Numbered from the stretch's first letter, positions 1 through 51,500 are shown. The stretch is DNA of 64,000 bases from Vitrella brassicaformis CCMP3155 (GCA_001179505.1 CDMY01000347.1:62001-126000); one strand, 5' to 3'. Numbers and translations are program-made. The notes: generated from the letters alone by a model not told the origin.

Positions 1-2062
1 GGCGCTTCCGTGTGTGGTGTGGTGTGGTGTTGGGTGGTGTGGTAGGGTGTGGAGAAAGGTGAGGAAGAGGGGGAGAGGGGGGAAATGAGGCCAGCAGGCA
101 AGCACGAGGCCGCATTTTTCCCAGTTAGTGCTGCAGCAGAGCTGACCGACTGACCGACCGAGAGCAGTCGACAGCCCAGCTCGTCTGTCTGTCTCGCGGC
201 AGGCGTTGCGTACATACCAGAGCCAAACACATAGACATACCAGAGAGAGAGAGAGAGAGATACACCCGTTAGGGCATGCATCCCATGCTACACGTCCATC
301 CATCCCATATCCATTTATATCGTACGATGCGGTGAGCGCTGTGCTATGCTATGCTGTGGAAAGCAGCAGGGAGTCAGTCAGTCAAGGAGGAGAGAGAGAG
401 GAGCGCTGGATGGGATATATGGGTGGGAGGACGGAGGCTCGCCCTGCCCCCTCCTCCGTGAGGCTCGCCCTGCCCCCTCCTCCGTGCCGTTAGCTCAGCT
501 GACTACTGACTGATCTGCCTTGCCTACGGAATTGTGACCACGACCAGAGAGGGAGAGGAAAGGGACACACAGAAGCGGGAATGACGTCGTGACACTAAGT
601 GAGGTAGACGGAGAGAAACAAACAGGCCACTCGAGAAAACGGCCGATGATTTTTCATTTCATTCGTTCGTTCCATCCGCATAGGGCATCCATCCATCTCT
701 CTATCTTTCTGTCTCTTCGATGGCCGCTCCAACACACATGAGTGGGCACCACCACACACATGAATGATGCGTAAGGACACGTAGATATGGCAGGTGGGTC
801 AGGCAGCGGGCCGTGAGTCAGTCAGGGGAGCAAGGGAAGGTGTCCACACCCCATTCCAACCACCCATCCGCCGTCCTCTCTCCTCATGTCGTCCTCCTGA
901 ACGCGTCTATTCCTCTTTCCCGCCCTGCCCTGTCCTGCCCTTCCCTTCCCTGACCAACCACCAGATTTTTGAGAGAGATCTGCGTTGATGATTCATGCAT
1001 GTCTTTTGGAGTGCTTGTGTGGACTACCACCTACTCTACCTGGCTGCCTGTTTTGCAGCCAGCCATGACAGCTGCTGAATGGATGGAGTGGAAGAACGAG
1101 CGGGGGAGAGGAGCGCATTATTTGACTGACGGTCGACGGTGCAATTTGCTCGTCGTGCATTCATTCAAATGTTCATTCGCACAAGCCATGGTGGGTCGGG
1201 TGTGGTTGGAGGGACTTTTTGCCTGGAGAGGGAGGGCATGGGGCTTTGGCGTGTGGGTGGGTGGGCGGGCGGGCGGGCGCAACGATCCTGAAAGGAAGAT
1301 GCAGGCCGCCTGGCTGCCCGACCCGCCGACTGACTGACCCGACCTCATGGATGGATGGATGGATGGCTGGCTGCCACATTCTTATTGCTCATTGTTGACG
1401 GCTGGCTGTAGTATGCGAAATGCAGTCTCCACGCGTGCGGCCATCGATGCGTGCGCGTTGCTTGCAATGCATGAGTGATGGATGAATGATGAGTACATGC
1501 ATGGCATTTTTGCGAGAGATCATCTCGCGTGTGGGTGTCGATGTATGGATGTCGTGTGCAAGTTTTCTCCTCCACTCATTCCTTCGTCACGCACATGCGC
1601 GTGATCACAACACACAGACAGACAGAGAGAGAGAGAGAGCGTATTTGTGCTGCAGAGTCAGGTCGGGGGGGGGAGGGGTGGGGAAGGGGTTGTGGTCTGC
1701 GCGCTGAAGTCTTCTTCTTTCATCAGTGTGTGCGTGCGTGTCTGCGTGTGGTGTGGTGTGGTGTCATGACGAGAGGAGTGCAGTGAATGTCCGTCCGTCC
1801 ATCCATATGTCCACGTCTACTGCTGTGATGTGCCTGTATGCCTGTGTGTGTGTATGTGTGTGCGCTGTATTTTTCTGCCCTTGGCAGGCACAGCTGAGCG
1901 GGGGAGATCGATCCGTTGCCACTTTTTCACCACCACCACCACCGTGTGTCATTCTGTGTCATGCTGTGCGATGCTGTGTGACGCTGTGTTGTCTTTCCCA
2001 TCATCCATGTATGCTTGACTGAGTCGGGGAGGGAGCGGGGAGGGGGGGGGGGGAGGGCATGG
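1..2062. repeat. Microsatellite-rich non-coding region ((GTG/GTGTG)n, (GA)n, (GGAT)n, (GT)n)
   Basis: Dense simple repeats; all ORFs here translate to low-complexity repeat-derived peptides with no recognisable domain. Confidence 0.7.
434..485. repeat. Perfect 2 x 26 bp tandem direct repeat
   Basis: GAGGCTCGCCCTGCCCCCTCCTCCGT occurs at 434-459 and 460-485. Confidence 0.9.
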
Positions 2063-2362
2063 NNNNNNNNNNNNNNNNNNNNNNNNNNNNNNNNNNNNNN
2101 NNNNNNNNNNNNNNNNNNNNNNNNNNNNNNNNNNNNNNNNNNNNNNNNNNNNNNNNNNNNNNNNNNNNNNNNNNNNNNNNNNNNNNNNNNNNNNNNNNNN
2201 NNNNNNNNNNNNNNNNNNNNNNNNNNNNNNNNNNNNNNNNNNNNNNNNNNNNNNNNNNNNNNNNNNNNNNNNNNNNNNNNNNNNNNNNNNNNNNNNNNNN
2301 NNNNNNNNNNNNNNNNNNNNNNNNNNNNNNNNNNNNNNNNNNNNNNNNNNNNNNNNNNNNNN
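2063..2362. other. Assembly gap (300 N)
   Basis: Run of exactly 300 N; GGAGGGCATGG flanks both sides. Confidence 0.99.
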
Positions 2363-3986
2363 GGAGGGCATGGTGGGTGAGAGAGAGCCAGAGAGAGCGA
2401 CAGAGAAGAGAGTGTGTGTATGCCATGTAACTACCTGCTTCTACTTACTGTGTTCTTGCACTAAGGCAGCGCAACAGCACATTAAGCTAACAGACACATC
2501 GAGAGAGAGATCAAGAGACGGTGTAGCAGACAGACAAGAGAGAGGACTGATGCGCGAGACAGAGAGAGAGAGAGAGAGAGCGCCGGGGAATGACAAGAGC
2601 GTTCTGTAGTCCATATAATGATATATCATGTCTCATTCATTCAGTCATTCATGGGTCGCTGGAGCTCGCTCGTCCAGCCGCACAGACAGCCAGTACTTCC
2701 TGTGGATGAGTGTTATTTTGAATGGACGTGGGGCTCCCTGCCTGGCTGGCTGGCTGGCTGGATGGATGGATGGCTGCTTGCCCTAGCTACTGACTGAGCT
2801 TCTTCCCTTCCTCCCTCCCTCCCTCCCTCCCTACACAAACCTAGTAACCACAAATTGACTCAAGAGGCCCACCACACGTGTGTGTGACGGACGACTGGCT
2901 GTCTCGTCTCTCTGATATGGATTGTTTCTTTCAAGGGCAGGCAGCGACAAGACCACACAGCACACCAATGAATGCATTGTGGTGCTGTGTTCGTTTCCAC
3001 GTACGTTTGTGCATGTATTTTTCGTCCCACAAGGGCGCACGCGCATCATGCCTGCACCGGACAGCACAGCACCCCAGTCACCAGACCTGACGAATGTGTG
3101 TGTGGTGTGATGGATGGGTTTGGTCGTCCGTTGTGTGCATGTGTGGGCGTCCATCCGTGATACACACCCATCCATCCATCCATCCCCCGCCATGGCATCC
3201 ACCCATGTGCCAGCTGTACATATCATACGCACTGCAGACACACACCGACACACAAGGCCAGACAGCACGTGCGCCTCGTTTTTCTCCCTCGCCGCTCGTC
3301 TGTGTGTGTGTGTGTGTGTCTGAGTCTGAGTCTGAGTCTGATGATGGATGGATATTGTCGCAGCCAGCTCCCTGCCTGTTTCAATTTTGGCTGAGGTGGC
3401 GGAGGAGCAGCTGGCTGCACGCGTGACTGCGTCGCACCCACATGACAGACACCAGTGGACCTTGCGAAATGCTTACATGATTCGTGTAAAACACGCCTGC
3501 CCGCGAAGCATGTCCACCGTGGCTCGATGGATGAGGTGAGTGGCGAGAACGACTTCTTTGCCACCCACCTCATCCCGATTCGTTCGAGCTTCAAGGAAAG
3601 GCACGTAGCTGCAGATCCGCCATCGGTGAAGTCAATGCCTTCATCCTTGAGCACCGCCACGACTAGAGGGCACACGGCTCCGTCTCTCCCTCCTCAATAC
3701 TGTTTGTCTTCTTTTGATGTATGCTGATGGTATGAACGAAAATGGAAGAACCACGGTCGCTGGCTGTGGGAACGAGAGGGGAGACACGTCCGTCAATTGA
3801 GCACGAACATCGATATATATATCACTCTATGTTGGGTCGGAGTGAGTGACAGAGTAAAACGGTGAAAGACAATTAATGCATCAGTCTCGCAGACGTCATG
3901 CGAAGAAGCCATCAGGAAAAGCACAACAAACAGGAGGAGGAGACACAGCTCTTATGTCTGAGACACACAAGCATATGAGCTAGGGC

Positions 3987-4937: not shown

Positions 4938-6543
4938 AGTCAGAAAGGAAAAACCCACCCATCGGGCTGTGCTGTGCTGTGCTGTGCGTGTGTATCCTGC
5001 CAACTCACTTGGATTTTGTTGTAGGTATATTGTGTGGTGAGAATGTATGTGTTTGTCCAGGGGTCGATCCTCGTCGACTGCACCGTATACGCGGCCTCCA
5101 GCAACAACGCTGCGCACACACACACAGACACACACACAGAGAGAGAGACAGAGGGGCATACGAAGAGCAATTTGTGGATGCATGTGTGTGTGGATGCGCT
5201 TAGAATACCATAGTCCAATGTCTCCTCCTCTCTGGAACACTTGAGCTGCCTGCATGGCATGGATTCGCATACAGACATCCCCCACCCACACGTGCTTTCT
5301 TTCATATGGGTGTTGTGGGGGATGAAGGGGGTACGTGCCTGTTGCTCTTGTGATGGTCGTCCATTTCCAGGTACACGTTGTCACGCGAGTACATTGACAG
5401 AGACTCCCTGCACACACACACATGGGTAGGTAGGTAGGTACAGACGCTCCCGTGCACTGCACCACACAAACCTGAACATGTGTGGTCCGTGCTCCTCCCT
5501 CTCCATCGACGAGCACTCCAGCGACCACTCACCACACAGACGGTCAACTGACCGACAGACAGGCAGACAAACAGACACACAGAGGGCATGTTCGTTCAAT
5601 GCATACAAACTGAGGGACACATACCAGTGGTGACTGGCGTGATGACCCGTTTCCCGGCTCCGTCAGCAGCTGGTGGTCGTGGCTGTTGTGGCTGCTGCCG
5701 ACACGGACATAACTGACACCCTACACGGACGCAGAAACAGAGAGACACCGACGTGTGTGTATGTCTTGGGCATAGGCACACCAGCAACCCACCACTGAGT
5801 CACTGACCTGCCGGCAGAGTCTGCCCCATCAGCGGCCCCTGCAGCCCCAGACCGACTCCAGACGTCGTCGACTGCTGCTGCGGCTGCTGTGGGGGCAGTG
5901 GTTGTGGCTGTGGCTGCTGCTGCGGCTGGAAGGGCTGCATTGGCTGCATTGGCTGGCCCCCCGCTGCTGCAGTGGGCGGCCCAACCTGCTGCTGTGGCTG
6001 CATTGGGGCAACAGCCACCGGCTGACTCACCTGCTGCAGTGGTGGCTGTAGTACGGGCGGGGGCAGGCCGGCTCCTTGCTGCTGAGGTACATTACCACTC
6101 CATTGCTGTGGTGGCGGCACCTGGGGGGGCAGCTGGCGAGCGGCCACAATTGCAGGTGGCTGAGGTGCGCTCACACTGACAGGCGACTGCTGGGGCGGCT
6201 GCTGCTGCTGACCCCCGTTGCCGACAGAGACAGACACTTGCTGCTGCTGCTGCGGCAATGGTGGGGCCTGTGGCGGCTGTTGTGGTGGAGGAGGGACGTT
6301 TGGTGCACCAGCAGCGCCCGCAGCAGCGACAGCCTGGGGAGCGGATACATTAGGCTGCTCTTGCTGCTGTGGGCCGCTGGGCGGCTGCTGTGCCTGCTCT
6401 TGTTGCGGCGGCTGGTTTGTGTCCTGAGGAGGAGCTTCCTGTTGCTGTGGCTGCTGCTGCTGCTGCTGCTCACTGCTGGTGGTCTCTTGTGGGCTCTGTT
6501 GGGTGTCTTGTGCTGGTGGCTGGGCGGCTTGTGTGTCCTGGGC

Positions 6544-6574
<31 letters not shown>

Positions 6575-7403
6575 GAGACAGACAGACAGAATGAGACAAA
6601 CACACAACAGAGCCCTCGGTGCGAATGCGTCTATCTGTTGAGGCTAGTTCGCCGCGCGTACGTCAGTCTGGCCGCCGTCTCCGTCTCCCTCTGAAGCCTC
6701 CCTGACCACCATAGTAGAGGTGTCACGCTGGTGCAGCGACGGACGCCCAGCGGACTTTACATTGGCACCCGGCATCATCATCTCGGCTGCAAAAGTGTGT
6801 GTATCATGCTCATGCCGCACACACACATGGGTCTGGTCTCTCCGCTTAGCTGGCTTACGTGTGATGTATTGTGCCGGTGGGAGTGGCATGGGAGGTGGCG
6901 GGAGGGGCACCATATAGGGGCCATAGGCGTACATGGCCGCTGCTGCCGCGGCCGCGGCTGGCGTCATTGGCGGGGGTGGGGGATACACATACATCGACAG
7001 AGGGTAGTCCTTGCCTGGGTCGGTCGAAACACACACACAGACAGTGAATGAGTGAGAGTGTGTTCCCTTCTCTCTCTGCAACAGTGGCCGGCCAACCGAC
7101 CTCTCTCTCTGTTCTTGATTGAGAGAAATGACAGCGGGGAATCATGCAGAAGCTGCTGACGCCCGTCAGACTCTCTCGTCCCGTTCGCGCAGCTGCGGGC
7201 CCCGCCTTTGCTCCTGCCTTCCCTGCACACACACACACAGACACACACACACACACACACAAGGCAGGCACGCAGGCAGGCGCCACGCGTGTTCGTGCAG
7301 CTGCATTATTGCATTACCTGTGAGCCGTCTCTGCGATTGTCCCACCCATCATGACGACGACGACAACGCACCCGAGTCTCAGCAGCCGAAACAACGATGC
7401 CAT
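3987..7403 (-). CDS. Secreted/surface protein: signal peptide, Pro/Ala- and Gln/Pro-rich stalk, Cys-containing globular domain, C-terminal hydrophobic (GPI-signal or TM) tail
   Basis: Multi-exon model from MASLFRLLRLGCVVVVVMMGGTIAETAH (ATG 7403) through GKDYPLSMYVYPPPPP, the Q/P-rich exon (about 5808-6540), VDRLCGEWSLECS, LLLEAAYTVQSTRIDPW and YDVRLYTEDNKLRYDRLY to SSSLLWSLYVAMVIAMWMLNTQ* (3987). Splice phases checked at most junctions; some internal boundaries are approximate. Confidence 0.7.
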
Positions 7404-7644
7404 GGTTCGCCCTGCAGTGCTCGTGCCACATTCATCTCATCCCTAGGGAGGGATGGGCTTGCAAGGGCTCTCGACGATCGCCGCCTCCCTCCACCATTTG
7501 CGAGCTTGACAGAGCTCTTCCTTCTCTTTAGCTGTTCTGACATAGACAGAGAGCACAGACAGTGCTCATCAAGACGGCTTTGCTGTGTCGTTCTTGCTCG
7601 GTTCTCTCTGCAGCAGTCACTGACAGCCTTGCCTTGTGTGTGTG
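7404..7644. promoter_or_regulatory. Putative bidirectional promoter with TGCGAGCTT at 7499-7507
   Basis: 241 bp between divergent ATGs (7403 minus, 7645 plus); contains the recurrent motif. Confidence 0.55.
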
Positions 7645-8843
7645 ATGCGCCTGCGCTCGTTTTGCTGGCCGTGGCTGTTGGTGTGTGGGTGCAGTGCTGT
7701 CTATGGAAAGCTGAGAACGACACGCTCGGCGCACACGGTATGTCAGCACACACACACACACACACGCATATCTCAGGGTGGCGCATTCTTCGTGTGTGTG
7801 TTTGTGTGTGGTTTGTGTGTTCTGCAGAATGAGACTGGCGCATTAGTCCGTTTGCTGCAAGGTGGCAATGGCGATGGTGATAGCGATGGCGGCAGCGTGC
7901 TGGAGGAGATCGAGAGTATGCCGACACACATGAATACGAGAGAGAAAGAGAGAGTGTCCATCATCATATCTGTGGCGCTCTGTGGTGACACCACAGGCAG
8001 CCCCTACCTGTGGCCGGAGAAGATACACAGCCTCCACACAGCAGAGGACGTACACACACTCACACACACACACACACAACAGGACACACAGAGCTGAGGT
8101 ATGTGTGTGTGTCGATATATACGACATGGTAGGTCGTGTCCGCCACTCGCGAGCTGCTGCTGTCCATATTCAGAGAGTGGTTCGGCGAGAAGAGGGTCAG
8201 TGCACTCACTGCACTCACTGCATACGGCCGTTCGTCTGGGGCGTGTGTGCACGTGTGTGTGTGTGTGTGCTGCAGGTGACGCACATCATAATGGTGGGCG
8301 CTGTGGGCGGCGGCGAAGGTGGGAACATGCAGCACATGAGTCCATCCACAAGCACGTGTTTCTGTGTCTGTGTGCCTTCATTTCCTTCCACAGGCGAGAA
8401 TAAGGGCGACATGGCCATCAACTGGGCGCAGGACATCCTCTTCAAAGAACTCGGTACACACGCAAACGCACACCCACGGCGGCAACACAAAGCGACAAGA
8501 ACGACACATTGATGTGTGTGACGCGTGTGAGTGTGTGTGTGTGTGTGTAGGCATCAGTGTGTGGCGGTATTGCCAGCTGCAGAGCGGGTGCGACTTCAAA
8601 CAGATGAAGAGGGAATGGGCCAAGGAGAAAGACAAACATGAAAGTACCCTCACACGCATTCACACGCACAGAGAGAGAGAGAGAGAGAGATCTGCCACAC
8701 ACACATACACATACACTGTGTGTTGACGCAGATGCCCAGCTGTGTGTGGTGTCTTTGGCTGGCGGCAACTTCAACGACAAGTGGGGAAGGGTGATGCAGG
8801 TGCGCTGTGCGGCCAGCCATACTCATCTGCACAGAGGGGGCAT

Positions 8844-8877
<34 letters not shown>

Positions 8878-9610
8878 TGTGCAGAAACTGCGAATCGACA
8901 TGGCCAAGAACTTCCAAGACGTTCCCATGATGATCCTCCCACAGGTAGCTCTCACGGGCATGCGCCTGAATGAGATGCACTTCTTTCTCTCTCTGTCTCT
9001 CTCTCTGCGCGACTGACTGCACACACAGAGCACCAAGTACGCCGACGCGTCCATCGAGAAGAAGCATGCCCAGGGCATGAAGCACCCTGACAGCGGTGCG
9101 GCCAACACACACATAAGCGACCACACACACAGTGGTGTGCTGTGTGGCCCTACAGCCTTCTGTGCGCGCGACAAGGCCTCATATGAGTGGACCATCAAAT
9201 CGCAGTTCAAGAGCACCTTCACACGTACGCCGGATGCCTCAACCCACAAACACACACACACACACACAGAGCCATTCATTCTCACGTGTGTGTCTGGTTG
9301 CCCAATGAACGAACGACTGACTGCAGGGATATTCCACACGCCCGACATCGCCTTCATGCTGGGCACACTGCCGAAGCCGGCCGTGGAGCAGCAGAGAGAC
9401 GTGCTGTGGCTGGAGGTAAGTCTGTCTGTGTCTGTGTCCCCATCCCGCCACCTCTCTCTCCGTCTCTCTCTCTGTGTGTGTGGGGGGGGTGGGTGGATAG
9501 CGCACTGACGGCGAGAAGGCCGCTTACGAGCTGCCCACTTTCCCTGAGGGCGTCTCTCAGTGACCAAACCATCCACACACACAACACACGCACAATCAAA
9601 TGAATGCGCG

Positions 9611-9644
<34 letters not shown>

Positions 9645-9966
9645 TAGTTATGTTGAGGATTGGTTCACGTGGAAGGTCATGGACATCCCAGCCTGGGAAA
9701 CATGGGATCAGTTCGTCGACCTCCTGGCCAAGCCGCGCACCCTCAATGGACTGGAGTACGCACTCAAATAAGCGGCACACACACACGCATCTATGGATCT
9801 GTGTGTTCGTTCCTTCGTGTGTGTGTGTGCAGGTTCCTTGCGCGCGGCCGAGTGGTGGTGACAGACAGGCTGCACGGGCACATTCTGTGCACTCTGATGG
9901 TGCGTCCGTTGCCCATTGCCCATCCGGACACTCATGCAGTGTGCCCAGGCGTCCATCGACGATATC

Positions 9967-10005
<39 letters not shown>

Positions 10006-13000
10006 TCCAGGGCCACCCCCATGTGGTGCTCGACAACGTGTACAGGAAGCTGGGCAACTATCTCGACACATGGACTGGGGGTGAGCAAGCCAAGCAACCC
10101 AGCCACCCTCCCACGAACGAAGGAGCTACACGAGATCACACCATTGTGTGTGTGTGTGTGTGTGTATGTGTGTGTAGGTGTGAGCAACATCATGTACACG
10201 ACCGACGCGCAGATGGCCATGAGGCTCGCCATGTTTTTGCTCTCACGGTGTGTGCGTGTGTGTCACCCTCTGTGCCCATCCATCCATCCGCGTGCGCGTG
10301 TGTGTGTGTGTGTGTGTGCGAAGCTACAAGGATGAGTCCCATTTCGACAAGAACTCGTGCTTCATGCGCGACGCCGGTGTGTGTGATCGGCATGGCATCC
10401 ACACACACACGCTTGCCGATCGTTCCTTCGTGTGAATCTCCTTCTCTCCTTCTGCCTCTGTGTGTGTGTGCGTGTCATTCTGCAGGCCTCACACCGTCTC
10501 TCTGCTGCGTGCCGGAAGGTATCTATCGTGCCACACACACACACACACACAAATCACATGATGCACGCCACACGTGTGTGTGACTTGTATGTGTGTGTGG
10601 GTGGGTGTGTCCACTGTAGGCGACAATTCCTCGACAGAGGGCGACGCCAAATACCTGAGCGGCAAGTGCTGGGTGAGTGAGTGAGCCAGCCAGGCAGCCG
10701 TGCAGTGTCTGTGTGTCTGTGTCTGTGTCTGTCCATCGCTCCATGGACTGGACGTGTGTGTCTTGTCTGCAGGGCGGCAAGTACACCTACAAGTCGTGCT
10801 GTGGCGGCGAGGGCGGGGAGAGCCCCGTCGAACAACAAGTAGCACTTACTGCCTGTGCTGTGATGATGATGCGATTCCCTCTGTGCTGTGTGCGATGGCA
10901 TCGATCGCATTCTGTGTGGTGTGCAGGAGCTGGCGTCACTGGCCGACCGAATGCGCGAGAAGGAAGCAGACGAGGACGGACCTGCTATAGGTACACACCG
11001 CACACACCTGGCCTGGAGGGAGGGAGGGAGGGAGGGATGGGCACACACGCGATGCGATGCCATGTGTGTGTCCGTGTGGCCCATACATCCATCCAGTGTC
11101 TGACCCCGACGCCATGCTCAAGGAGGCCCGCGATCAGCAGCAGGGCGGCACCACCAGCGGCAGCAGCAGCAGCAAAGAGGGCAACTCGCAACAGGCCGAC
11201 GGAGATGAAGTGGCCGAGGAAACAGGTATACGTGTGGTTGTCCACACACACACGCCCGGGGCATGTTTGTTTGTCTGTGTGTGTGTGTGTGTGTGCGTCG
11301 AGCAGAGGAAGACCAGCAGCAGCAAGGGCAACAAGAGAAGCAGCAAGAGGCCCCCCCAGCACCACAACCAGCAGCACCACAACCAGCAGCAGCAGCAGCA
11401 GCCGACATCATCAGCACGGTAAACCCACACACACACCCCTCCGCTCATACACACACACTGTAGTTGCTCCCTACCTGCAGCTGGCCAGCGACCCTTCCCA
11501 CTTCCCCAACGCCATTAGGAAGATAACCGACGCGCAGGAGCTGGTGCCCTCTCTCCGTCTGGTGCTCCTCACCGCTATGAAGCAAGCCTTCGTTGACGAG
11601 TAATCACTCTTAAACACACACTCTTCAACACACACCCGCACAGAGAGAGAGAGAGGGGGGGGGGAGAGGGAGAGTCTGTGTGTATGTGTGTCTGTGCAGT
11701 GACGGCCAGCCGATAAGGCGCGGCATAATGGTGGGCGCTGAGGGCGGCGGCGAAGGTGGGAACAGCACATGAGTCCATCCATCCACAAGCACGTGTTTCT
11801 GTGTCTGTGTGTGTTCATTATTTTCCTTCCACAGGCGAGAATAAGGGCGACATGGCCATCAACTGGGCGCAGGACATCCTCTTCAAAGAACTCGGCATCG
11901 ACATCATCTGGTGCGGCTTGGGCGTGGCGTGGCGTCCGCCCACAAATTGTCCACCCACACTGGTTGGTGTCTGTGTGCGCGTGTGTGTGCAGGTATTGCC
12001 AGCTGCAGTACAACTGTGACTTTGGCAAGGCGCTGGAAACCATCGAGAGAAGCGCAGACGACAAGTCGCCTGTGGCCGTCATGTCCATCGCCGGCGGCAA
12101 CTTCAACGACTTCTCGCCCATGCAGGCAAGCCCACCACACGCCCCTCCCGACACACCTGACAGACATGCACTGTGGACGACGGCTGATGTCGATGTGTGT
12201 GCAGGAGTTGCGCGTCAACATGAGCAAGGCATTCCCCGACCAGCCCGTCTTCATGCTGCCGCAAAGCGTGCGCTCCCTGACACACAATCATGGCATGGAC
12301 CTTTTGTTACCCATATATGTGTGTGTGTGCGTGTGCGCGCGTGTGTGTGTGTGTGTGTGTAGGTGGTTTACAACGACGCTAAGCTGCTCAAGCGGCATGC
12401 AGACGGCATGGCGCACGACAGAAGCACCATGTTCGCGAGAGATGTGAGGGCATGCCACACACACACACACATTCCTCTGTGTCTGTGTCTGAGTGTGTGT
12501 GGATCCTCTGTGTGTGTGGCTGGCTCGGCTTGTTGTGTGTCGGGTATGGGTGGGTGCAGCTGCCCTCCTACACGAAGCTGCAGAGCGGTCCATTCAAGGA
12601 CGCATTCAAACGCATTTACCTGGTTAGTGCAGTGCCTGTCTGTTCTGTGTCCACACGCACAGGTCTCTCTCCCTCCCTCTCTCTGTGCGCGCGTGTGTGT
12701 GTGTGCAGGTGCCGGACATCGCGTACATGCTCGGCATGCGGCAAGATCTCGAGGCAAGAGCACAGCCACACACACACACACACACATGAAATGGAGGCTT
12801 CCTGTGTGGTGTGGTGTGGTGTGGTGTGCACTCACTGCACAGCTGGATCCGCCTGTACACGATCTGCTGTGGCTCAAGAGAGTGGACAACGAGAGGCAAC
12901 GGTACCTAGAGACTTACTGATTGCGATAGATAGAGTAATTAGATGCTCGCTCGTGGACGTGACGTGCAAATGTGGCTGTGCACTGCACTTCGTAGGTATA

Positions 13001-13278
13001 AGCCGCCCGTCTTCTCAGAAGGCGTCGACTTCGTTGTCGAAGACTGGTCAGCCAGCATCTCCATCCATCCATCCAGCCATGTCTGTGTCCATGTCTGTGT
13101 CTGTGTGTTGGCAGGTTTCCTTACATGAAGACATCGGCCAAGTGGACGGACTGGTCGTCTTTCGTCGAGAACCTCGCGGAACCCAGGACCATCAACGGCT
13201 TCAAGTGGGTGTCTGTCTCTTCCGCCCACCCACTCTTCCACACACACACACACACGCATCAGCTCTCCCTCTCTCTCC

Positions 13279-13313
<35 letters not shown>

Positions 13314-15411
13314 CAGGTTCCTCTCTCGGGCGCACGTCGTGGTGACGGACAGGCTGCACGGGCACATTCTCATGACGCTCCTGGTGCGCACATGTCGCAT
13401 CGACACACACACACACACGCACACACACACCTCTCTCTACGTGTCTCTCCCTCTCTCTGTGTGTGTAGGACAAGCCGCATGTGGTGCTGGACAACAAGTA
13501 CAGGAAGCTGGGCAACTACTTGGACACTTGGACTGGGGGTAAGAGATTGATACACCACACACAACGGAGACGCATGGCTGTGCATGATCTCTCTCTCTGT
13601 CTCTCTCTCTCTCTCTGTGTGTGTGTGCAGGGTTGTCGAATGTGCTGTATACGGACAGCCCCGACACAGCCATACACATGGGCGAGTTCATGCTCACCAG
13701 GTGCTCACGGTGCTTTCATGTGTGTGGTGTGTGTGGGCCGTGCTGCGTGCTGTGTCAGTCATGGTGTCTGTGCTCTCATAATGCGCATCTCTGTCTCTCT
13801 CTGTGCGGTGTGCGTGTTCTGTGTGTGTGTGAAGGTATCGGCCAGACGCGGAGTTCTCGCAAGAGCTCTGCTTCAATGACAACGGTGAGCGACACACACA
13901 GACAAACACACACGCACACACTGCATCTCTTTCTGTCTCTCTGTGTGTGTTTTGCCTGTGCAGCCAACCTGAGTGAGGCCTTCTGCTGCAACACCGAGCA
14001 GCAGCAGCAAGCCGACGACACCCCAGCCCTCATAAACCCTCAGAAATGCTTCGTAACCCAACCACACAACCACACACGCGCCCCTCAACACAGTGTCTGT
14101 GTGCTTCTTGTCTGCACACGCAGGGCGGGCCCTACACACGAGAGAAGTGCTGTCCTGACGGGAAGCCGATGGCGGCAGCGGCGCCCTTGACATACAGCAT
14201 GGTGCGGGCCATGGTGGAGGGCACCAGCAGTGCACAAGAACCACAACCACAACCACAACCACAATCGCAATCGCAGAAGCAAGACCAAGACACAGCAGCA
14301 GCAGCAGCAGAAGGGCAACAACAGCAGCAGACAGCGAGGTCAGAGGAGGTTGCTCCCCCTGCCGTGCCGATGGCGTCGCAAGCAGAGCTGAATGCACTGG
14401 GCAGCCGGATGGACACCATCACTGCAAAGGTAAGGACACTACCTCCACCCACCCCACACACCACACCCACAGGCATCATCTATGTCGCTATGTGTGTGTG
14501 TGAAGGTGACCGACGTCGATAAGAAGGAGGGCGACGTCGAGGGCCGAGTCGACAGGCTGGAGAAGTCCTTAGCCGAGCTGGCGGGCACCGTCAAGACGGA
14601 AAAGGGCAAAAGAGAAACCGTCGAGTGAGTGAGTCTCTCTGTCATTCATTCAGCTCGCACCCATCCCCTACCCACCCCATCCCCACAAACCTGTCTGTGT
14701 GTCTGTGTGTCTGTCTGTGTCCATGCCATGTATGTGTCTGCAGGTCGTCTGTGTCTGCGCTCACAGCCGACCTGCAGAAGGTCACGGGCAAAGTCGATGG
14801 TCGGTATACACACACACACACACACAAAGCGCTGTCGACGCAGATTGGTCACACACGTGTATTGTGTTGTGTTGTGTTGTGTGTTGCGCTTGCAGGTTTG
14901 GACAAGAAGCGCCAGACAGACGCAGACAGCGTCAAGGGCGAGGTATAGTATAGAAGGAGACAGACAGACAGACTGACTTACACCCACCCAGTCAGCCAGC
15001 TATCCGTCTGTCTGAGAATCTTGGTGTGTTGTGTGACATCACACATGGGTGGGGTGCAGATCAAGGGCATCAAGCAGCAGATGGAAACTGAGCGCATCGA
15101 AAGGTACGGACGGACCTCTGTTGCTGTTGGTGCTGGTTGGACCCCATTCTCTGTCTGTCTGTCTGTGTCAATCTGGATGACAGAGAGTCGTCTCTCTTCG
15201 CGAAAAACCAGTTCCCCTTCGTCGCAGCCCTCATCGCATGGATCCCTCTCGTACTCGGTGGGTGTCATGGCTGGATGGATGGATGGCTGGCTGGATGGAT
15301 GGATGTGTTCATGTCATGGGTGTTTTGTCTTGTCTTGCAGGTCTGTTCTACTGCTGCTTCCGGCGGAACTCGCAGCACTACACCCTGCTGCCCACCACCA
15401 AGAACGGATGA
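7645..15411 (+). CDS. Type I membrane protein with two tandem polysaccharide pyruvyltransferase (PS_pyruv_trans, Pvg1/EpsI-like) domains
   Basis: Signal peptide MRLRSFCWPWLLVCGCSAVYG. Domain 1 motifs: ENKGDMAI, GGNFND, LPQ, ARDKAS, PDIAFMLG, VVTDRLHGHI, DNVYRKLGNY. Domain 2 motifs: ENKGDMAI, GGNFND, LPQ, ARD, PDIAYMLG, VVTDRLHGHI, DNKYRKLGNY. Linker exons splice in frame; a coiled-coil stalk, TM FPFVAALIAWIPLVLGLFYCCF and tail RRNSQHYTLLPTTKNG* (TGA 15409-15411) follow. Confidence 0.8.
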
Positions 15412-16248
15412 ATGAATGACCGACAGACAGACGGACGGAGGGAGGGAGGGAGGGTGTGAGAGTGGATGAGTGCCGTGCATGGCTCGACTGAGTCTGTCCG
15501 TGTCTGTGTCTTTCCCCCCTCTCTCTCTTTTTGCGTCTATGTGCAATTCGTGCATACCATCGCACAGTGGGCGCAATTCAGACATTCAGACAGACAGACA
15601 GACAGACAGATGGCGGCCTTGTATGTGCGCCGCATGTTTTTGGGTGTCTTGTGTATATGACGATATGGTGGTCTCTCTCTGCTTGCGTGTGTGTGTGTGT
15701 GAGTGCGTGTGTGTCCCTATCCATCCATCCATCCATCCATCCATTCAGGTGTGTTAATTCATTCATTCGTTCATCAGACAGGCAGGTAGCGTAGCGTAGA
15801 CAGCCTCGGTTGATTGGTATGATTGCCCCGGCCTCTCTCTCTGTGCTGGGTGTGAGGATTCAGACCTTGGCCCATTCATTCATCGTGTCCAGTCCACTTC
15901 ACGCACTACCGAGCATGGACAAGCTGGCATTGCCCGCCCAAAGCTGCCGCTTGCGACACACGGCTCCGCTCTTTGGCAAAGACAAAGGCTCCATTTCTAC
16001 GCATTCGCATCCTCCGTAAGGGGAGAATAGATGCACACACAAATTGATCAATTGATTCATGTCCGTCTGGTTGTCATGATCACACCCACACACACAGCCT
16101 CATCGAATCAAGCCGACAATATTGTCAACAACACAAAATGGTTGATCGTCACCCTCTCTCGGCATCACCATAACCAACATACCACACCAACACAAAAACA
16201 CCACCCACTCACTCCACTCGCCGACCGGTCGGTAAGTCAGTCGGACAG

Positions 16249-16515
16249 TCAGCCGGCCTTGAGAATGGCCTTGACCATGTGGCTCCTCACCGCCCCGCCG
16301 TCACTGTAGTGCCCCCCGCCCATCAGGTGTGTGTCAGGGGGCATCGACGGCATCGCGTTGGGGCTATGGACGGCGAAGTCCTTGATGTAGAGGGTCCAGA
16401 AGGTCTTGTAGAAGCGGTAGATCTGCACCTCCCCTGTTGCCTTGAGGTCGGGCAGCTGCCCCTCGCCCCGCTGCAGCTCGCGACGAACCGCCTGCGCGCA
16501 CACACACACACTGCA

Positions 16516-16553
<38 letters not shown>

Positions 16554-16722
16554 TGTGTGCTTTCTGTGCTGCGGCTGTGGGTGCATTCGCGTCGCCTACC
16601 TTGAGGGCTTCAGCGTGCACTCGTTGTGCAAGTTCCTTGGTGAGCAGTGACTCGCTGGTCATGGCCCGGAGGGTGTCCTTGAGGGCGGCTATCACCTTTG
16701 ACTTGCCGTAGACGTCATCCAT
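16249..16722 (-). CDS. TOA2: Transcription initiation factor IIA gamma (small) subunit
   Basis: Two exons (16600-16722, 16249-16491): MDDVYGKSKVIAALKDTLRAM..LTKELAQRV..KAVRREL..ATGEVQIYRFYKTFWTLYIKD matches the TFIIA-gamma pattern (Y..S..G..L..TL..L..I..LA..V / G.L..YRF...WT). The start may lie further upstream. Confidence 0.75.
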
Positions 16723-17061
16723 CGGTGTGGCCGTGAGTGCGATGGATGGACAATAGGCAAGGCAGCAGACACTCCACGCCACACCACGCGACGTGCGAGA
16801 TCTCCTCCTGCAGCAAAACAAACATGCAGCAGGAAGCGATGCATTTGATGATGATGTGCTCACATCGTGTGGCTCTGCTTCACCTGCGTCTGTCTTTCCT
16901 CGGCGGCTTGCGATCTAAGCTCGCAGCTTTCGAGGTGCGTGAGACCGCTCTTTCAGGTGCGTGAGACCCCTCAGGAAGGCGCAGGCGGTCAACAGGTGCG
17001 TCAAAAGAGAAGTCTTTCACACATCTGTCAATTGCATGCACTGTCTTGCCCTTCCCTGCAG
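16723..17061. promoter_or_regulatory. Divergent intergenic region with AAGCTCGCAG (reverse complement of CTGCGAGCTT) at 16917-16926
   Basis: Between TFIIA-gamma (minus) and orphan pseudogene copy 1 (plus); contains the recurrent motif. Confidence 0.45.
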
Positions 17062-18931: not shown

Positions 18932-19231
18932 NNNNNNNNNNNNNNNNNNNNNNNNNNNNNNNNNNNNNNNNNNNNNNNNNNNNNNNNNNNNNNNNNNNNN
19001 NNNNNNNNNNNNNNNNNNNNNNNNNNNNNNNNNNNNNNNNNNNNNNNNNNNNNNNNNNNNNNNNNNNNNNNNNNNNNNNNNNNNNNNNNNNNNNNNNNNN
19101 NNNNNNNNNNNNNNNNNNNNNNNNNNNNNNNNNNNNNNNNNNNNNNNNNNNNNNNNNNNNNNNNNNNNNNNNNNNNNNNNNNNNNNNNNNNNNNNNNNNN
19201 NNNNNNNNNNNNNNNNNNNNNNNNNNNNNNN
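18932..19231. other. Assembly gap (300 N)
   Basis: Run of exactly 300 N flanked by poly-C. Confidence 0.99.
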
Positions 19232-48520: not shown

Positions 48521-51500
48521 ATGCTCATACAAGACGACACAAGACAGCAACCGACAGCCGGCGACCCCCCTCCCGCCCAGACACAGCCCGCCACAACCAG
48601 CAGCAGCAGCACCACCACCACCAGACGGCGGCACCCCCCTACCGCCTCCCTCCCCCTCCGCCTTCCCTCTCTCAGCTCTTTCAGCTGGGTCCTTGCGGTG
48701 CTGCTGATCGTCCTTTTGTCGTCCCTTCCCCTGTCGGTGCGTGCGCAGCGGCTTGAGATATGTCCATACGACGAGGGCTACGGCGAGTACGCGTTCTCGC
48801 CGAAGAGCGGCAAGTGCGAGAAGATCCACCTGGGCGGCGACATCTTCCCCGTCATCAATGCGACTGACGAGCTGTTCCTCTACGGCAAGTTCGAGGCGCG
48901 CATCAAGGCCTTCCAGTGCAGCGGGGCGATTGTGACCTTCTTTCTCTATAAGCCCAACTCTGACAAGCCCGGCAGCCAGTGGCAGGAGCTCGATATCGAG
49001 ATATTCGGGTCGACGGCCCACCTGTGGGAGGAGGGGACGGAGAGCGGCGTGCCCAACACGTTCCAGTCCAACCTGATCACGGGCATCACGCCCGGCCGTG
49101 AGCTCAAGGAGGCCAAGCACGTGACCGACACCCGGCTTGACACGGAGTTCCACACCTACACGATGGAGTGGACGCCGACGCGCATCGCGTGGTTCTTTGA
49201 CGATGAGCTGGTGCGGGAGGACACCGACCCCGACTCGATGAAGAAAATGAACGAGTCCATGACGCTACACATCAACGCATGGGTGGTCAACCCTCGTATC
49301 GAGATGTGGGCGGGCGTCTTCGACCCCGACTGTCTGCCCCTCACCGCCCAGTTCGATTACGTCAAGGTGTGGGACTACGATAACAAGACCGATGACTTCA
49401 CGCCTCGCTGGTCCGACACCTTTGATGAGTTCAAGGAGTACAGCAAGGGCGGCAGGTGGGGCATCGGCGAATACACTTTCGACTTCAACCGCGTCCAGTA
49501 CGAGAAGAGCCAGGTGACCGCCAAGAACGGCACCCTGCATGTCGTGGTCGACCGGAAGAATCTTACGGCCGAGTACCCGCCCTACGGTGAGTGAGCCCCC
49601 AGGCCGCCCCGCACTCCTCTGCGGTCGATCATTCTGTCTGTCTGTCTGATATCCATCCTTGCTGCCTTGCCTCAGAGTCGATAGACAATTCGTGTTGGGA
49701 GCTAGACACGGCCATCAACGACTTCACTCTGGGGATAGAGGAGCTCGACAAAATCACGGTGCCGCTGTTCGAGAAGGCCAACACCTCCGACGCGTGCCAG
49801 GCGGCGTGCCAGGCCGAGTGGCGGTGTCGCCACTTCACCTTCACAGAGGGCTACGGCTGCGAACTCAAATGGAACCGCACACAGGACAGCGTCAAGATCG
49901 CTGAGGGCGCCACCACCGGGCCAAAATACTGCGGTAAAGAGCCAACAGAGTGACCACACACACATCGAAGGAGAGACACACTACTACATGTGCTGTCCTT
50001 TGTGCCTCGTCCGTCATCAGTTGAGTGGTGCATTGAGGAGCTTGAGGATGGCACGGACGTCAACCAGTACTACCAGCTCGAGAACCTCAAGGCCAAGTCG
50101 CGCAAGGCCTGCGCCGACACGTGCCTGGAGACCACATTGTGTGGGGGCTACGTGTACCACCCCAAAAGCCACAACTGCCAGATGAAGGGCTTCCCCTCCG
50201 TCCCCAAGAACGTCAGCGACGAGAGCCCCCATTTTCAGGGCGGTGTCAAAATTGCGTGCGGCTACCCGGCGACCACCCCACCGCCAGAAGGTCGCCCCGC
50301 CCACACAGGCGGACACACATGGCCACATGGCATGGCCCCATTGATCTGTGTGTGCGAATTGCGTGCAGAGATATCGTGTTACAGCATGCCTGCCGACTAC
50401 AAGGGTCTGGATGTGGGTGGCAAAGCCAAGGGCGTCAAGACGGCTTCCGAGTGCCAGGCGCTGTGTCAGGAGAACAAGCAGTGCTTCAACGTCGTCTATG
50501 GCGAGCAGTGGGGCGGGTGCTACCTCAAGGGTTGGGAGGTCGAGCTGGACAAAAAAACAACTGGCCTCATTGCAGGACCCAGAAGCTGCGGTGAGCGAGC
50601 GAGGAGACAGCGCACAAACAAATCGTCAAACCAGCACATCGGTGTCTGTCTTTCTTCTGTCGTCTTTCTGTTGTGGTCAGACCTGGATTGTGTCGAGGAG
50701 GGCTTCATCTACCACAGCAACGACACGCTCGGCCTGATGGACACCCCCTCAGACGCGCACAAGTCACCCGACACCTGTGCCATGGCCTGCGAGGACACGG
50801 CAGAGTGCTCCATCTTCACTTGGCGGGGGCCGCAGTGCCACCTGTTCGGCAAGGAGGACGACAAAACCCCCCTGCACATCATCAAGGGCACACCCGACAA
50901 GGGGGACAAGTCGCTCAAGGCCGCCAAGAAGGAGTGCGAGTCGGTGTGCAAGGACGACACGAGCTGCCACAGCAGCCGTATACTGGAGGCCCAGTGCATG
51001 CTCATGCCACACGAGGAGAACAAGCCCGTCGTCAAGGTGCCCGTCTACGGCTACTACCACGACGCCTTCGTGCCCTACGTCTCCGGCCCTGCCGCATGCC
51101 CCTCCCGCGCCAGCAAGGACCTCATCAACGACCTCGTGGCTGCGGGCATGCAGAACCTCACCGTGGCCCAACGCAAGAGGAACACCAACACACCCGACAA
51201 GTGCCCAGATGGGTATATCCGCGGCACCAACGGCGTCTGCTATCGTCTGAGCTTCGAGCGTGCCACGTGGGAGGAGGCGGAGGCCATCTGTGAGGGCGAG
51301 AAGGCGCACCTGGCCACTCCCACAACTGCCGAGGACCAGGCGAGCATCCTGGAGCTCTTCTGTCTCGACGACGGCATGTGCCTCGTCCCCAGGGACGGCT
51401 TGCACGACGGCGACTACTTCATCGGACTCAGAAGGACCAACAAGGTGGGTGGGATACATTGACGGGGCAGGGGGGGATGTGAGCAAGCTGTGACGGTGGA

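What the first reader, a model, noticed from the sequence alone, without database searches (positions are those of the whole stretch)
7645..15411. One polypeptide with two pyruvyltransferase domains in type I membrane topology
Seen: two complete PS_pyruv_trans-like domains, each retaining the RD, PD and TDRLH motifs, joined by in-frame linker exons, then a coiled-coil stalk, C-terminal TM, a CC pair and a YTLL tail. Known: characterised members (S. pombe Pvg1, bacterial EpsI/WcaK types) are single-domain, and Pvg1 is a type II Golgi protein. Inference: a two-site enzyme ketal-pyruvylating wall or surface glycans in an alveolate, possibly sorted by the YxxL motif.
Basis: partly seen in the sequence, partly recalled or inferred. 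Interest (0 to 1): 0.75.

Follow-up and report, generated by a model that had tools for sequence, protein, structure and literature searches.

The report
Tandem two-domain pyruvyltransferase, C-terminally membrane-anchored
This is one real, expressed 47-exon gene of an alga (most likely Vitrella brassicaformis) whose 1209-residue protein carries two complete copies of the enzyme domain that caps sugars with pyruvate, on a long helical stalk anchored by a C-terminal membrane helix; no close relative found here has this layout, but its activity is untested.

Summary
I rebuilt the gene as 47 exons: ATG at 7645, TGA at 15409-15411, CDS 3630 nt, 1209 aa.

**One transcript.**
- Spliced contigs in three runs match the model to the base.
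- Two JGI transcript scaffolds (L001, L002) carry CDS nt 327-3630 as one gap-free ORF. That stretch runs domain 1, linker, domain 2, stalk, TM, stop.
- No stop codon and no transcript end lies between the domains.
- Database protein P0121 (1090 aa) equals the model from Met120 to the end.

**Family.**
- P0121 scores 134.9 bits on PF04230 (cut-off 25.3), in two stretches.
- Both domains keep the Pvg1p residues D106, R217, D240 and R337-L338-H339.
- The fold predicted for unit 2 matches Pvg1p (5AX7, TM 0.82).

**Rest of the protein.** Each domain is followed by a C-x11-CC-x19-C-x9-CC module. After domain 2 come a 111-residue heptad helix, one TM helix and the tail FRRNSQHYTLLPTTKNG.

**Origin.** The two units are sister to each other (100/100), share 7 intron positions and are 47% identical. 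One exon has been homogenised by gene conversion.

**Novelty.** Of 288 relatives fetched, only this protein has two full domains. Earlier scan notes describe other pyruvyltransferase genes elsewhere in this genome, including transporter and GT8 fusions.

Activity, substrate, topology and YxxL sorting remain inferences. I rate it a new variant of a known kind.

The parts
7510..15944 (+). Transcribed span. The 5' UTR starts at or before 7510. The 3' UTR reaches at least 15944, and in scaffold L001 reaches 16811 with a further intron at 16494-16598.
   Evidence: JGI transcript scaffolds L001 and L002 align at 100% identity to the window exons.
7645..15411 (+). Coding sequence: 47 exons, 3630 nt, 1209 aa. 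Forty-four introns are GT-AG and two are GC-AG (12126-12204 and 12754-12842).
   Evidence: Exon table. The model reproduces the RNA contig lengths and coordinates exactly. P0121 is identical to residues 120-1209.
7645..7707 (+). Signal-peptide-like N-terminus MRLRSFCWPWLLVCGCSAVYG (residues 1-21).
   Evidence: Sequence reading: a basic n-region, a hydrophobic core and small residues before Lys22. This is a heuristic only; no signal-peptide predictor was available.
7997..8318 (+). N-terminal helix and first strand of unit 1 (residues 63-114; exons 3-5).
   Evidence: Aligns with the equivalent part of unit 2. Present in the transcripts.
8394..10247 (+). Pyruvyltransferase domain 1 (residues 115-407; exons 6-17). 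Key residues are D119, R234, D259 and R350-L351-H352.
   Evidence: Local family HMM 191 bits, E 1e-60. Pfam PF04230 stretch on P0121. Exon-level PF04230 hit. 297 PF04230 homologues found with two of its exons.
10324..10838 (+). Cys module 1, C-x11-CC-x19-C-x9-CC (Cys 419, 431, 432, 452, 462, 463; exons 18-21).
   Evidence: The same spacing recurs after domain 2. No Pfam match.
10927..11418 (+). Acidic, Gln-rich, low-complexity interdomain linker (residues about 476-577; exons 22-24).
   Evidence: In-frame exons spliced in RNA contig '1547' and in L001/L002.
11481..11755 (+). N-terminal helix and first strand of unit 2 (residues 578-636; exons 25-26). The donor GT at 11600 removes the TAA at 11601-11603 that would otherwise end the frame.
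   Evidence: Sequence. Contig '1547' continues 72 nt past 11599, made of exon 26 plus 16 nt of exon 27. Contiguous in L001 and L002.
11835..13700 (+). Pyruvyltransferase domain 2 (residues 637-923; exons 27-38). Key residues are D641, R752, D777 and R868-L869-H870.
   Evidence: Local HMM 184 bits. Pfam. Pvg1p 5AX7 by sequence, E 1e-30. AF2 pLDDT 88 with Foldseek hit 5ax7_A, TM 0.82.
13835..14153 (+). Cys module 2 (Cys 937, 949, 950, 970, 980, 981).
   Evidence: AF2 confidence is low here.
14154..14378 (+). Pro/Gln/Ala-rich low-complexity spacer (residues 982-1056).
   Evidence: AF2 pLDDT below 50. Composition.
14379..15199 (+). Helical stalk with one heptad register (residues 1057-1167; exons 41-46).
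   Evidence: AF2 gives a single 111-residue helix at pLDDT 87-95. Heptad test. Only weak coiled-coil Pfam hits.
15206..15357 (+). Transmembrane helix FPFVAALIAWIPLVLGLFYCC (residues 1170-1192). It is split by intron 15258-15340 and ends in a CC pair.
   Evidence: It is the only segment with Kyte-Doolittle above 1.6 over 19 residues. AF2 predicts a helix. The joint 15257/15341 is in the RNA contigs.
15358..15411 (+). 17-residue tail FRRNSQHYTLLPTTKNG plus the stop codon. YTLL lies at 15379-15390.
   Evidence: Sequence.
8276..8453 (+). Gene-conversion tract shared with 11713-11894: exon 5, intron 5 and exon 6 against the end of exon 26, intron 26 and the start of exon 27.
   Evidence: blastn gives 91.5% identity over 176 nt. 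Exon 6 is 60/60 identical. Intron 5 is 83% identical to intron 26, against 50-60% for other homologous intron pairs.

Best explanation
What is shown: a single gene makes a single mRNA and a single 1209-residue protein.

Order of parts:
1. A signal-peptide-like N-terminus.
2. Unit 1: a helix, a Pvg1p-type ketal-pyruvyltransferase domain, then a six-Cys module.
3. An acidic disordered linker of about 115 residues.
4. Unit 2, with the same three parts.
5. A disordered spacer.
6. A 111-residue heptad helix.
7. One transmembrane helix.
8. A 17-residue basic tail.

How it arose: an old internal tandem duplication at the intron-containing DNA level. One exon-intron-exon tract was later homogenised by gene conversion.

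What is inferred:
- The N-terminus enters the secretory pathway. Both enzyme domains then face the lumen of the Golgi/TGN, or wall-forming vesicles.
- They sit away from the membrane, on a probably oligomeric coiled-coil stalk anchored at the C-terminus. This mirrors the usual type II Golgi transferase.
- Each domain uses phosphoenolpyruvate to put a pyruvate ketal on a sugar of a glycoprotein or wall polysaccharide, galactose by analogy with Pvg1p. This adds negative charge.
- PEP would be supplied by a TPT-family carrier. The nearest relatives of these domains are fused to such a carrier.
- The PEP-binding core is 79% identical between the two domains, while the rest is about 43% identical. 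The two sites may therefore share a donor but differ in acceptor.
- The tail's YTLL and the juxtamembrane CC pair are candidate sorting and palmitoylation signals only.
For: Single transcript and ORF:
- Spliced contigs in runs X1, X7 and X8 are absent from DNA run X3.
- The exon model predicts the 1547-nt contig exactly. It also predicts the record coordinates 42, 973, 1279 and 1619 of the 1883-nt contig.
- L001 and L002 carry CDS nt 327-3630 contiguously.
- P0121 is identical to residues 120-1209.

Family:
- Pfam PF04230 134.9 bits against a cut-off of 25.3, in 2 stretches.
- Local HMM 191 and 184 bits.
- All 15 invariant columns of a 77-sequence alignment are kept by both domains.
- The Pvg1p residues D106, R217, D240 and R337-L-H339 map to conserved residues in both.
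- AF2 plus Foldseek put 5AX7 first: E 7.8e-19, TM 0.82, rmsd 2.6 A.

Duplication:
- D1 and D2 are sisters at 100/100 support.
- They share 7 intron positions.
- They are 47% identical over 405 columns.
- The conversion tract is described.

Topology:
- The only strong hydrophobic segment is residues 1170-1192, and RR follows it.
- The stalk is a long helix with heptad periodicity.
- Twelve cysteines lie in two identically spaced modules, and there are four N-x-S/T sequons.
- The Pvg1p crystal structure has a C68-C373 disulfide, and the enzyme uses PEP imported into the Golgi by Pet1p/Pet2p.

PEP link: the nearest relatives P0250, P0263, P0265 and the Chromera protein P0285 pair the domain with a multi-TM N-terminal region. 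Pfam finds TPT in P0250, P0263 and P0265; for P0285 no transporter family was recorded.
Against: - No biochemical data exist for this protein or any close relative.
- The signal peptide is judged by eye only. Its 19-residue hydropathy is modest (1.1).
- Contigs cannot show the true 5' and 3' ends or isoform ratios. An isoform that skips from the first identical exon to the second, giving a single-domain protein, cannot be excluded.
- The three RNA-like runs gave identical contigs, and one shares a sample with the DNA run. The two JGI samples may be the same strain. Independence is therefore limited.
- The Cys modules fold with low confidence.
- A stalk of this length is unusual for a Golgi enzyme, and a surface location would lack PEP.
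- Domain 1 was not folded here.
Confidence: 0.72

Rival explanations
1. Two adjacent tandem-duplicate genes, each with one domain, that only appear joined because of read-through or assembly across a repeat.
For: The assemblies break or gap exactly at the identical exon. The Logan contigs split there. L001 and L002 have a 100-N gap at the first copy. Without splicing at 11599/11600 the frame would end at TAA 11601-11603.
Against: The 1547-nt unitig runs from domain-1-specific sequence through five spliced linker exons into domain-2-specific exon 26 with no repeat in between. The frame stays open throughout. L001 and L002 cross the second repeat contiguously. No stop codon, no second signal peptide and no start context precede domain 2. 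The GT donor at 11600 is used.
Confidence: 0.03
2. A tail-anchored protein. The N-terminus is not a functional signal peptide, so both enzyme domains face the cytosol, where PEP is abundant. Only the 17-residue C-terminus would be luminal.
For: The TM lies 17 residues from the C-terminus, as in tail-anchored proteins. N-terminal hydropathy is only moderate. PEP is cytosolic.
Against: The N-terminus has the n/h/c layout of a signal peptide. RR lies directly after the TM, so the positive-inside rule puts the tail in the cytosol. There are two conserved six-Cys modules and four sequons. Pvg1p and the transporter-fused relatives point to luminal action.
Confidence: 0.07
3. Only one domain is catalytic. 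The other is a pseudo-enzyme serving as a glycan-binding or dimerisation partner, an intramolecular stand-in for the second protomer of the Pvg1p homodimer.
For: Pvg1p is a homodimer whose active sites lie far from the interface. D2 has the longer branch, 0.95 against 0.55. Outside the PEP core the domains are only about 43% identical.
Against: Both domains keep every invariant family residue and all proposed PEP and acceptor contacts. Nothing marks either as degenerate.
Confidence: 0.12
4. A plastid-directed protein, where the signal peptide is the first half of a bipartite leader as in other complex-plastid algae.
For: The organism is a chromerid alga. A short basic, hydroxylated stretch (KLRTTRSAHT) follows the signal-peptide-like region.
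Against: The following 40 residues are acidic and Gly-rich (DGDSDGG, EEIE), unlike transit peptides. The C-terminal TM plus YxxΦ tail and the coiled-coil stalk fit the endomembrane or surface route. Relatives are Golgi-type.
Confidence: 0.04

Closest known systems
Schizosaccharomyces pombe Pvg1p (PDB 5AX7), Golgi 4,6-ketal-pyruvyltransferase of galactose
   Same: Same Pfam family and same fold: sequence E 1e-30, Foldseek TM 0.82. The same NKGD, RD, PD and TDRLH residues are present, that is D106, R217, D240 and R337-L338-H339. Action is probably luminal and PEP-dependent.
   Different: Pvg1p has one domain, is about 400 aa, is type II with an N-terminal anchor, and forms a homodimer. The protein here has two domains in one chain, each with an added six-Cys module. 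It has a long helical stalk, a C-terminal anchor and 27% identity to Pvg1p.
Bacterial Pvg1p-like pyruvyltransferases annotated EpsO, EpsI or PssK (300-360 aa)
   Same: Full-length domain homology at 27-31% identity, with 15 shared invariant residues.
   Different: The bacterial proteins are soluble, single-domain and cytoplasmic, and act on lipid-linked precursors. They form the sister side of the tree to the eukaryotic clade.
Transporter-pyruvyltransferase fusions: P0250 on Vitrella contig CDMY01000243.1, Chromera velia P0285, P0263/P0265, and many molluscan proteins
   Same: They are the closest sequence relatives of both domains, at 33-40% identity and in the same eukaryotic clade. They are membrane-anchored eukaryotic pyruvyltransferases.
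   Different: They have one pyruvyltransferase domain, anchored by an N-terminal multi-TM region. Pfam identifies that region as TPT in P0250, P0263, P0265 and the molluscan proteins. No tandem repeat, stalk or C-terminal TM is present.
Pyruvyltransferase-GT8 fusion P0264, from the same transcriptome sample as this gene
   Same: It is the nearest single relative in the tree and comes from the same organism. It too is a multi-domain glycan-modifying enzyme.
   Different: Its second catalytic domain is a GT8 glycosyltransferase, not a second pyruvyltransferase.

Membership tests
Pfam PF04230 PS_pyruv_trans (Pvg1p-like ketal-pyruvyltransferases) | Match to the family profile above the curated gathering score | tested here: met
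   P0121, identical to residues 120-1209, scores 134.9 bits against a cut-off of 25.3, E 7e-39, in 2 stretches. Single exons alone gave only 17-20 bits.
Pfam PF04230 PS_pyruv_trans (Pvg1p-like ketal-pyruvyltransferases) | Two complete copies rather than one copy plus a fragment | tested here: met
   The local family HMM (337 positions) matches positions 40-334 at residues 115-407 and positions 40-332 at residues 637-923, with 191 and 184 bits (old numbering 142-434 and 664-950).
Pfam PF04230 PS_pyruv_trans (Pvg1p-like ketal-pyruvyltransferases) | Proposed catalytic and PEP-binding residues of Pvg1p: D106, R217, D240, R337-L338-H339 | tested here: met
   Mapped through the 5AX7 alignments and the papers. 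The equivalents are D119/R234/D259/R350-L-H352 and D641/R752/D777/R868-L-H870. All 15 invariant alignment columns are kept in both domains.
Pfam PF04230 PS_pyruv_trans (Pvg1p-like ketal-pyruvyltransferases) | Two-lobed alpha/beta/alpha fold of Pvg1p | tested here: met
   Unit 2: AF2 pLDDT 88, pTM 0.89. Best PDB match is 5ax7_A with E 7.8e-19, TM 0.82, rmsd 2.6 A. Unit 1 was not folded; it is 47% identical to unit 2.
Pfam PF04230 PS_pyruv_trans (Pvg1p-like ketal-pyruvyltransferases) | PEP-dependent transfer of pyruvate to a sugar | not testable with these tools
   Needs an enzyme assay.
Type I single-pass membrane protein | Cleavable N-terminal signal peptide | tested here: inconclusive
   MRLRSFCWPWLLVCGCSAVYG has the n/h/c layout, but no predictor was available. 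The best 12-residue hydropathy is 1.58.
Type I single-pass membrane protein | One TM helix near the C-terminus with a basic cytosolic flank | tested here: met
   Residues 1170-1192 have hydropathy 2.34. AF2 predicts a helix and RR follows directly.
Coiled-coil stalk | Long helix with hydrophobic a/d heptad positions in one register | tested here: met
   111-residue helix at pLDDT about 90. 67.7% of a/d positions are hydrophobic, against a shuffle mean of 40% and a maximum of 61% in 2000 shuffles. The oligomeric state is unknown.
YxxΦ (AP-adaptor) sorted cargo | Functional tyrosine motif in a cytosolic tail | not testable with these tools
   YTLL is present at residues 1200-1203, 8 residues after the TM. 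Four-residue motifs occur by chance: nine Y-x-x-Φ matches in this protein.

The most novel reading that the evidence does not exclude
The two fused domains form an intramolecular equivalent of the Pvg1p homodimer, with two different acceptor specificities. An oligomeric coiled coil holds them more than 15 nm from the membrane. The enzyme would then work on bulky wall or mucilage polymers in wall-forming vesicles or at the nascent wall, rather than on membrane-proximal glycoproteins. It would install two kinds of pyruvate ketal in one pass. With the transporter- and GT8-fused paralogues, this would mark pyruvylated glycans as a major, undescribed wall component of chromerid algae.
Probability: 0.2. 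Interest if true: 0.65.

Novelty: new variant of a known kind. Interest (0 to 1): 0.45.

Why it matters
Among eukaryotes the 2019 review names only S. pombe Pvg1p as a functionally studied ketal-pyruvyltransferase, and information on eukaryotic pyruvylated glycans is scarce. This gene shows the domain in a new arrangement: two apparently active copies in one chain, and an anchoring mode opposite to that of Pvg1p.

The same alga also has transporter-fused and GT8-fused paralogues. Together they give concrete targets for asking whether chromerid walls carry pyruvate ketals, how PEP reaches the secretory lumen, and whether the Pvg1p dimer can be replaced by a tandem fusion.

The sequence-space survey in that review was limited to proteins of 250-600 aa, so it would have excluded this protein. 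The only public protein record I found for it (P0121) lacks the first 119 residues, signal peptide included, because of a scaffold gap.

Tried and rejected
- Exon-by-exon Pfam scans gave only sub-threshold PF04230 hits on the VVTDRLHG exons. The linker, Cys modules and N-terminal exons gave nothing. The stalk gave only weak coiled-coil hits.
- My first 5' model kept 7916-7996 as coding (1236 aa). The transcripts showed it is an intron, so the model was corrected to 1209 aa.
- The first word search could not return the gene's own product because of the length filter.
- The whole-protein word search was swamped by low-complexity words: 8000 candidates and 5 hits. I repeated it on domain 2 alone.
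- The ESM Atlas search gave only single-domain PF04230 clusters at scores of 0.81 or below.
- Literature searches found no paper on tandem pyruvyltransferases, nor on pyruvyltransferases in chromerids, dinoflagellates or Perkinsus.
- The joint '13206 goes back to 9855' and the joint '11899-A-11983' are alignment artefacts. They come from paralogous exons laid on the wrong copy or on masked repeats, and are not back-splices.
- Most of the 40 'multi-domain' hits of the local HMM are one domain split in two. P0122 has one domain plus a repeated C-terminal half and may be an assembly artefact.
- The joined exon model was used only inside the sandbox: translation, self-alignment, a local HMM and the tree. 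It was never sent to a search tool. The joined first 119 residues therefore went unsearched as a unit.
Full report
**Setting.** The window is intron-rich eukaryotic DNA of about 57% GC. Exons are short and introns are full of (CA)n and (CT)n runs. A DNA self-comparison showed two paralogous halves inside the finding: 8287-8454 matches 11724-11895 at 91.5% identity, and 9817-10085 matches 13301-13543 at 71%. Pfam scans of stop-free pieces hit PF04230 only weakly, on the VVTDRLHG exon of each half (E 9.5e-4 and 5.3e-3). That is expected for exons of about 24 residues.

**Transcript evidence from sequencing runs.**
- Four runs hold about 28% of the stretch's words, which fits exons only. Four other runs hold 64-92%, which fits DNA.
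- I laid 9450-15449 (6000 letters) on X1, X7, X8 and DNA run X3.
- The three RNA-like runs each gave the same two spliced contigs, 1547 and 1883 nt. Their GT-AG joints are absent from X3.
- I then read the sequence and built an exon model.
- The model predicts the 1547-nt contig to the base. It runs from 8429 in exon 6, through domain 1, the Cys module and the linker exons, into exon 26 and 16 nt of exon 27.
- Both contigs start or stop exactly 30 nt from the last mismatch between the two near-identical exons. A k=31 assembly graph must break there.
- The model also reproduces the 1883-nt contig's record coordinates at four exon starts.
- The apparent stop TAA at 11601-11603 is removed by a canonical GT donor at 11600. 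The frame continues as ...QAFVD-D-DGQPIRRGIMVGAEGGGE-GENKGD.

**Independent confirmation from the protein and transcript databases.**
- An exhaustive HMMER search with two domain-1 exons (reference window:9828-10082) found P0121, 1090 aa, with four matched stretches.
- P0121 is identical to my model from the Met inside ENKGDM to the end.
- It is encoded on two JGI transcript scaffolds from two samples, L001 (5209 nt) and L002 (4415 nt). Both match the window's exons at 100% identity.
- They corrected my 5' model: 7916-7996 is an intron.
- In each scaffold the 5' piece covers CDS nt 1-359. A 100-N scaffold gap then sits at the first identical exon. The 3' piece covers CDS nt 327-3630 without interruption.
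- The gap explains why the public ORF call starts at Met120 and lacks the signal peptide.
- The final model has 47 exons, 3630 nt and 1209 aa, with ATG at 7645 and TGA at 15409-15411. An in-frame TGA at 7621-7623 lies upstream in the same exon.

**Caveats on the transcript evidence.**
- The contigs are identical across runs.
- One RNA-like run shares a sample with the DNA run.
- Contigs cannot show transcript ends or isoform ratios.
- An isoform that skips between the two identical exons cannot be excluded.

**Family membership.**
- Two exons of domain 1 alone retrieved 297 proteins, and all those listed carry PF04230 (EpsO, EpsI, PssK types).
- An HMM built locally from 107 of them matches residues 115-407 (191 bits) and 637-923 (184 bits), over profile positions 40-334 of 337.
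- Pfam on P0121 gives 134.9 bits against a cut-off of 25.3, in two stretches.
- The only solved relative is S. pombe Pvg1p, 5AX7.
- Using the chain-to-native offset of 53, Pvg1p's proposed catalytic and PEP-binding residues fall in four motifs: D106 in NKGD, R217 in RD, D240 in PD, and R337-L338-H339 in TDRLH.
- Both domains keep all of them: D119/R234/D259/R350-352 and D641/R752/D777/R868-870.
- In a 77-sequence alignment both domains keep all 15 invariant columns.
- AF2 of unit 2 gives pLDDT 88 and pTM 0.89. Foldseek ranks 5ax7_A first, with E 7.8e-19, TM 0.82 and rmsd 2.6 A.

**The rest of the protein.**
- The repeated unit is about 400 residues: 63-463 against 582-981, 47% identical over 405 columns.
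- Each unit comprises an N-terminal helix, the enzyme domain, and a module of six cysteines with identical spacing, C-x11-CC-x19-C-x9-CC. This module has no Pfam match and low AF2 confidence.
- Between the units lies an acidic, Gln-rich linker.
- After unit 2 comes a disordered Pro/Gln spacer.
- Next is a single 111-residue helix at pLDDT 87-95. It has no proline and one heptad register, with 67.7% hydrophobic a/d positions. None of 2000 shuffles reached that value.
- Then comes the only strongly hydrophobic segment, 1170-1192, ending in CC.
- The tail is FRRNSQHYTLLPTTKNG.
- The N-terminus MRLRSFCWPWLLVCGCSAVYG looks like a signal peptide. The basic residues after the TM fit a cytosolic tail. 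The layout is therefore type-I-like, the reverse of type II Pvg1p. Orientation and cleavage are inferred, not shown.

**Origin.**
- In a maximum-likelihood tree D1 and D2 are sisters (100/100).
- They sit inside a eukaryotic clade whose nearest members are three proteins:
  - P0264, a pyruvyltransferase-GT8 fusion from the same JGI sample as L001.
  - P0250, a TPT-transporter fusion encoded on CDMY01000243.1. That accession series is the Vitrella brassicaformis assembly according to PMC4501334.
  - A Chromera velia protein, P0285.
- Seven intron positions are shared between the units. The duplication therefore happened in intron-containing DNA and is old.
- Exon 6 is 60/60 identical to the start of exon 27, and the preceding intron is 83% identical to its counterpart. 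Other homologous intron pairs are 50-60% identical. This is a gene-conversion tract of about 175 bp.
- Outside that tract the PEP-binding core is 79% identical and the rest 27-43%.

**Novelty.**
- Among 288 relatives fetched from the multi-billion-protein collections, only this protein has two full domains. P0122 has one and a half.
- The domain-restricted search among long proteins found fusions to TPT, GT8, GT2, methyltransferase or TPR modules, but no tandem.
- The Atlas and literature searches found no tandem.
- The sequence-space survey in the 2019 review was limited to 250-600 aa.
- More distant family members were not enumerated, so the layout is rare, not proven unique.
- Earlier notes of this scan name the genome as Vitrella and list other pyruvyltransferase loci. 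I confirmed only the existence and provenance of the TPT and GT8 fusions.

**Verdict.** The function is a well-founded inference: a two-site, PEP-dependent ketal-pyruvyltransferase facing the secretory lumen. Substrate, activity of each site, orientation and YxxL sorting are open. It is a new variant of a known kind of moderate interest.

Noticed in passing
window 8276-8453 and 11713-11894: A gene-conversion tract of about 175 bp lies between the two halves of the gene. One exon is 60/60 identical. The flanking intron is 83% identical, while other homologous introns are at background level (50-60%). This identical exon is what breaks or gaps every short-read transcript assembly of the gene.
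   Followed up: yes
L001:495-594 and L002:479-578 (JGI transcript scaffolds): A 100-N scaffold gap sits at the first identical exon, with 33 nt duplicated on either side. It makes the public ORF call (P0121) start at Met120. The record therefore lacks the signal peptide and the NKGD aspartate of domain 1.
   Followed up: yes
proteins P0250, P0263, P0265, P0147, P0168, P0266-P0284: Fusions of a TPT-family sugar-phosphate/PEP-type transporter to a Pvg1p-like pyruvyltransferase are widespread. They occur in gastropods (Haliotis, Lottia, Nucella, Gigantopelta, Physella) and on a Vitrella contig. The Chromera protein P0285 also has a multi-TM N-terminal region, and a Tigriopus protein (P0277) carries the pyruvyltransferase domain; no transporter family was recorded for either. 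This Rosetta-stone link matches the Pet1p/Pet2p-Pvg1p pathway of fission yeast.
   Followed up: partly
window 12126-12204 and 12754-12842: Two GC-AG introns, both with a GCAAG donor, occur among 46 introns. Both are confirmed by the transcripts.
   Followed up: partly
window 15412-16811; L001:3899-5190: Scaffold L001 runs on through a 3' UTR with a further intron (16494-16598). It continues into the region of a convergent minus-strand ORF at 16249-16863, so neighbouring transcripts overlap or were merged at their 3' ends.
   Followed up: no
protein P0122 (568 aa, source not looked up): This pyruvyltransferase has its C-terminal half (RSRFPAVRSALVPDMA...VITDRLHAHIL...) repeated almost verbatim after a short spacer. 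It is either a recent partial tandem duplication or an assembly artefact.
   Followed up: no
window 48521-49594; L005: An intron-free GH16 ORF of 357 aa is directly followed by a PAN-domain ORF. It is found in a Logan assembly of run ERR558151. I used it only to try to identify the source organism.
   Followed up: no
window 5800-6603 (minus strand): A long Gln/Pro-rich ORF lies upstream on the opposite strand, divergent from this gene. Runs of N lie at 2063-2362 and 18932-19231.
   Followed up: no
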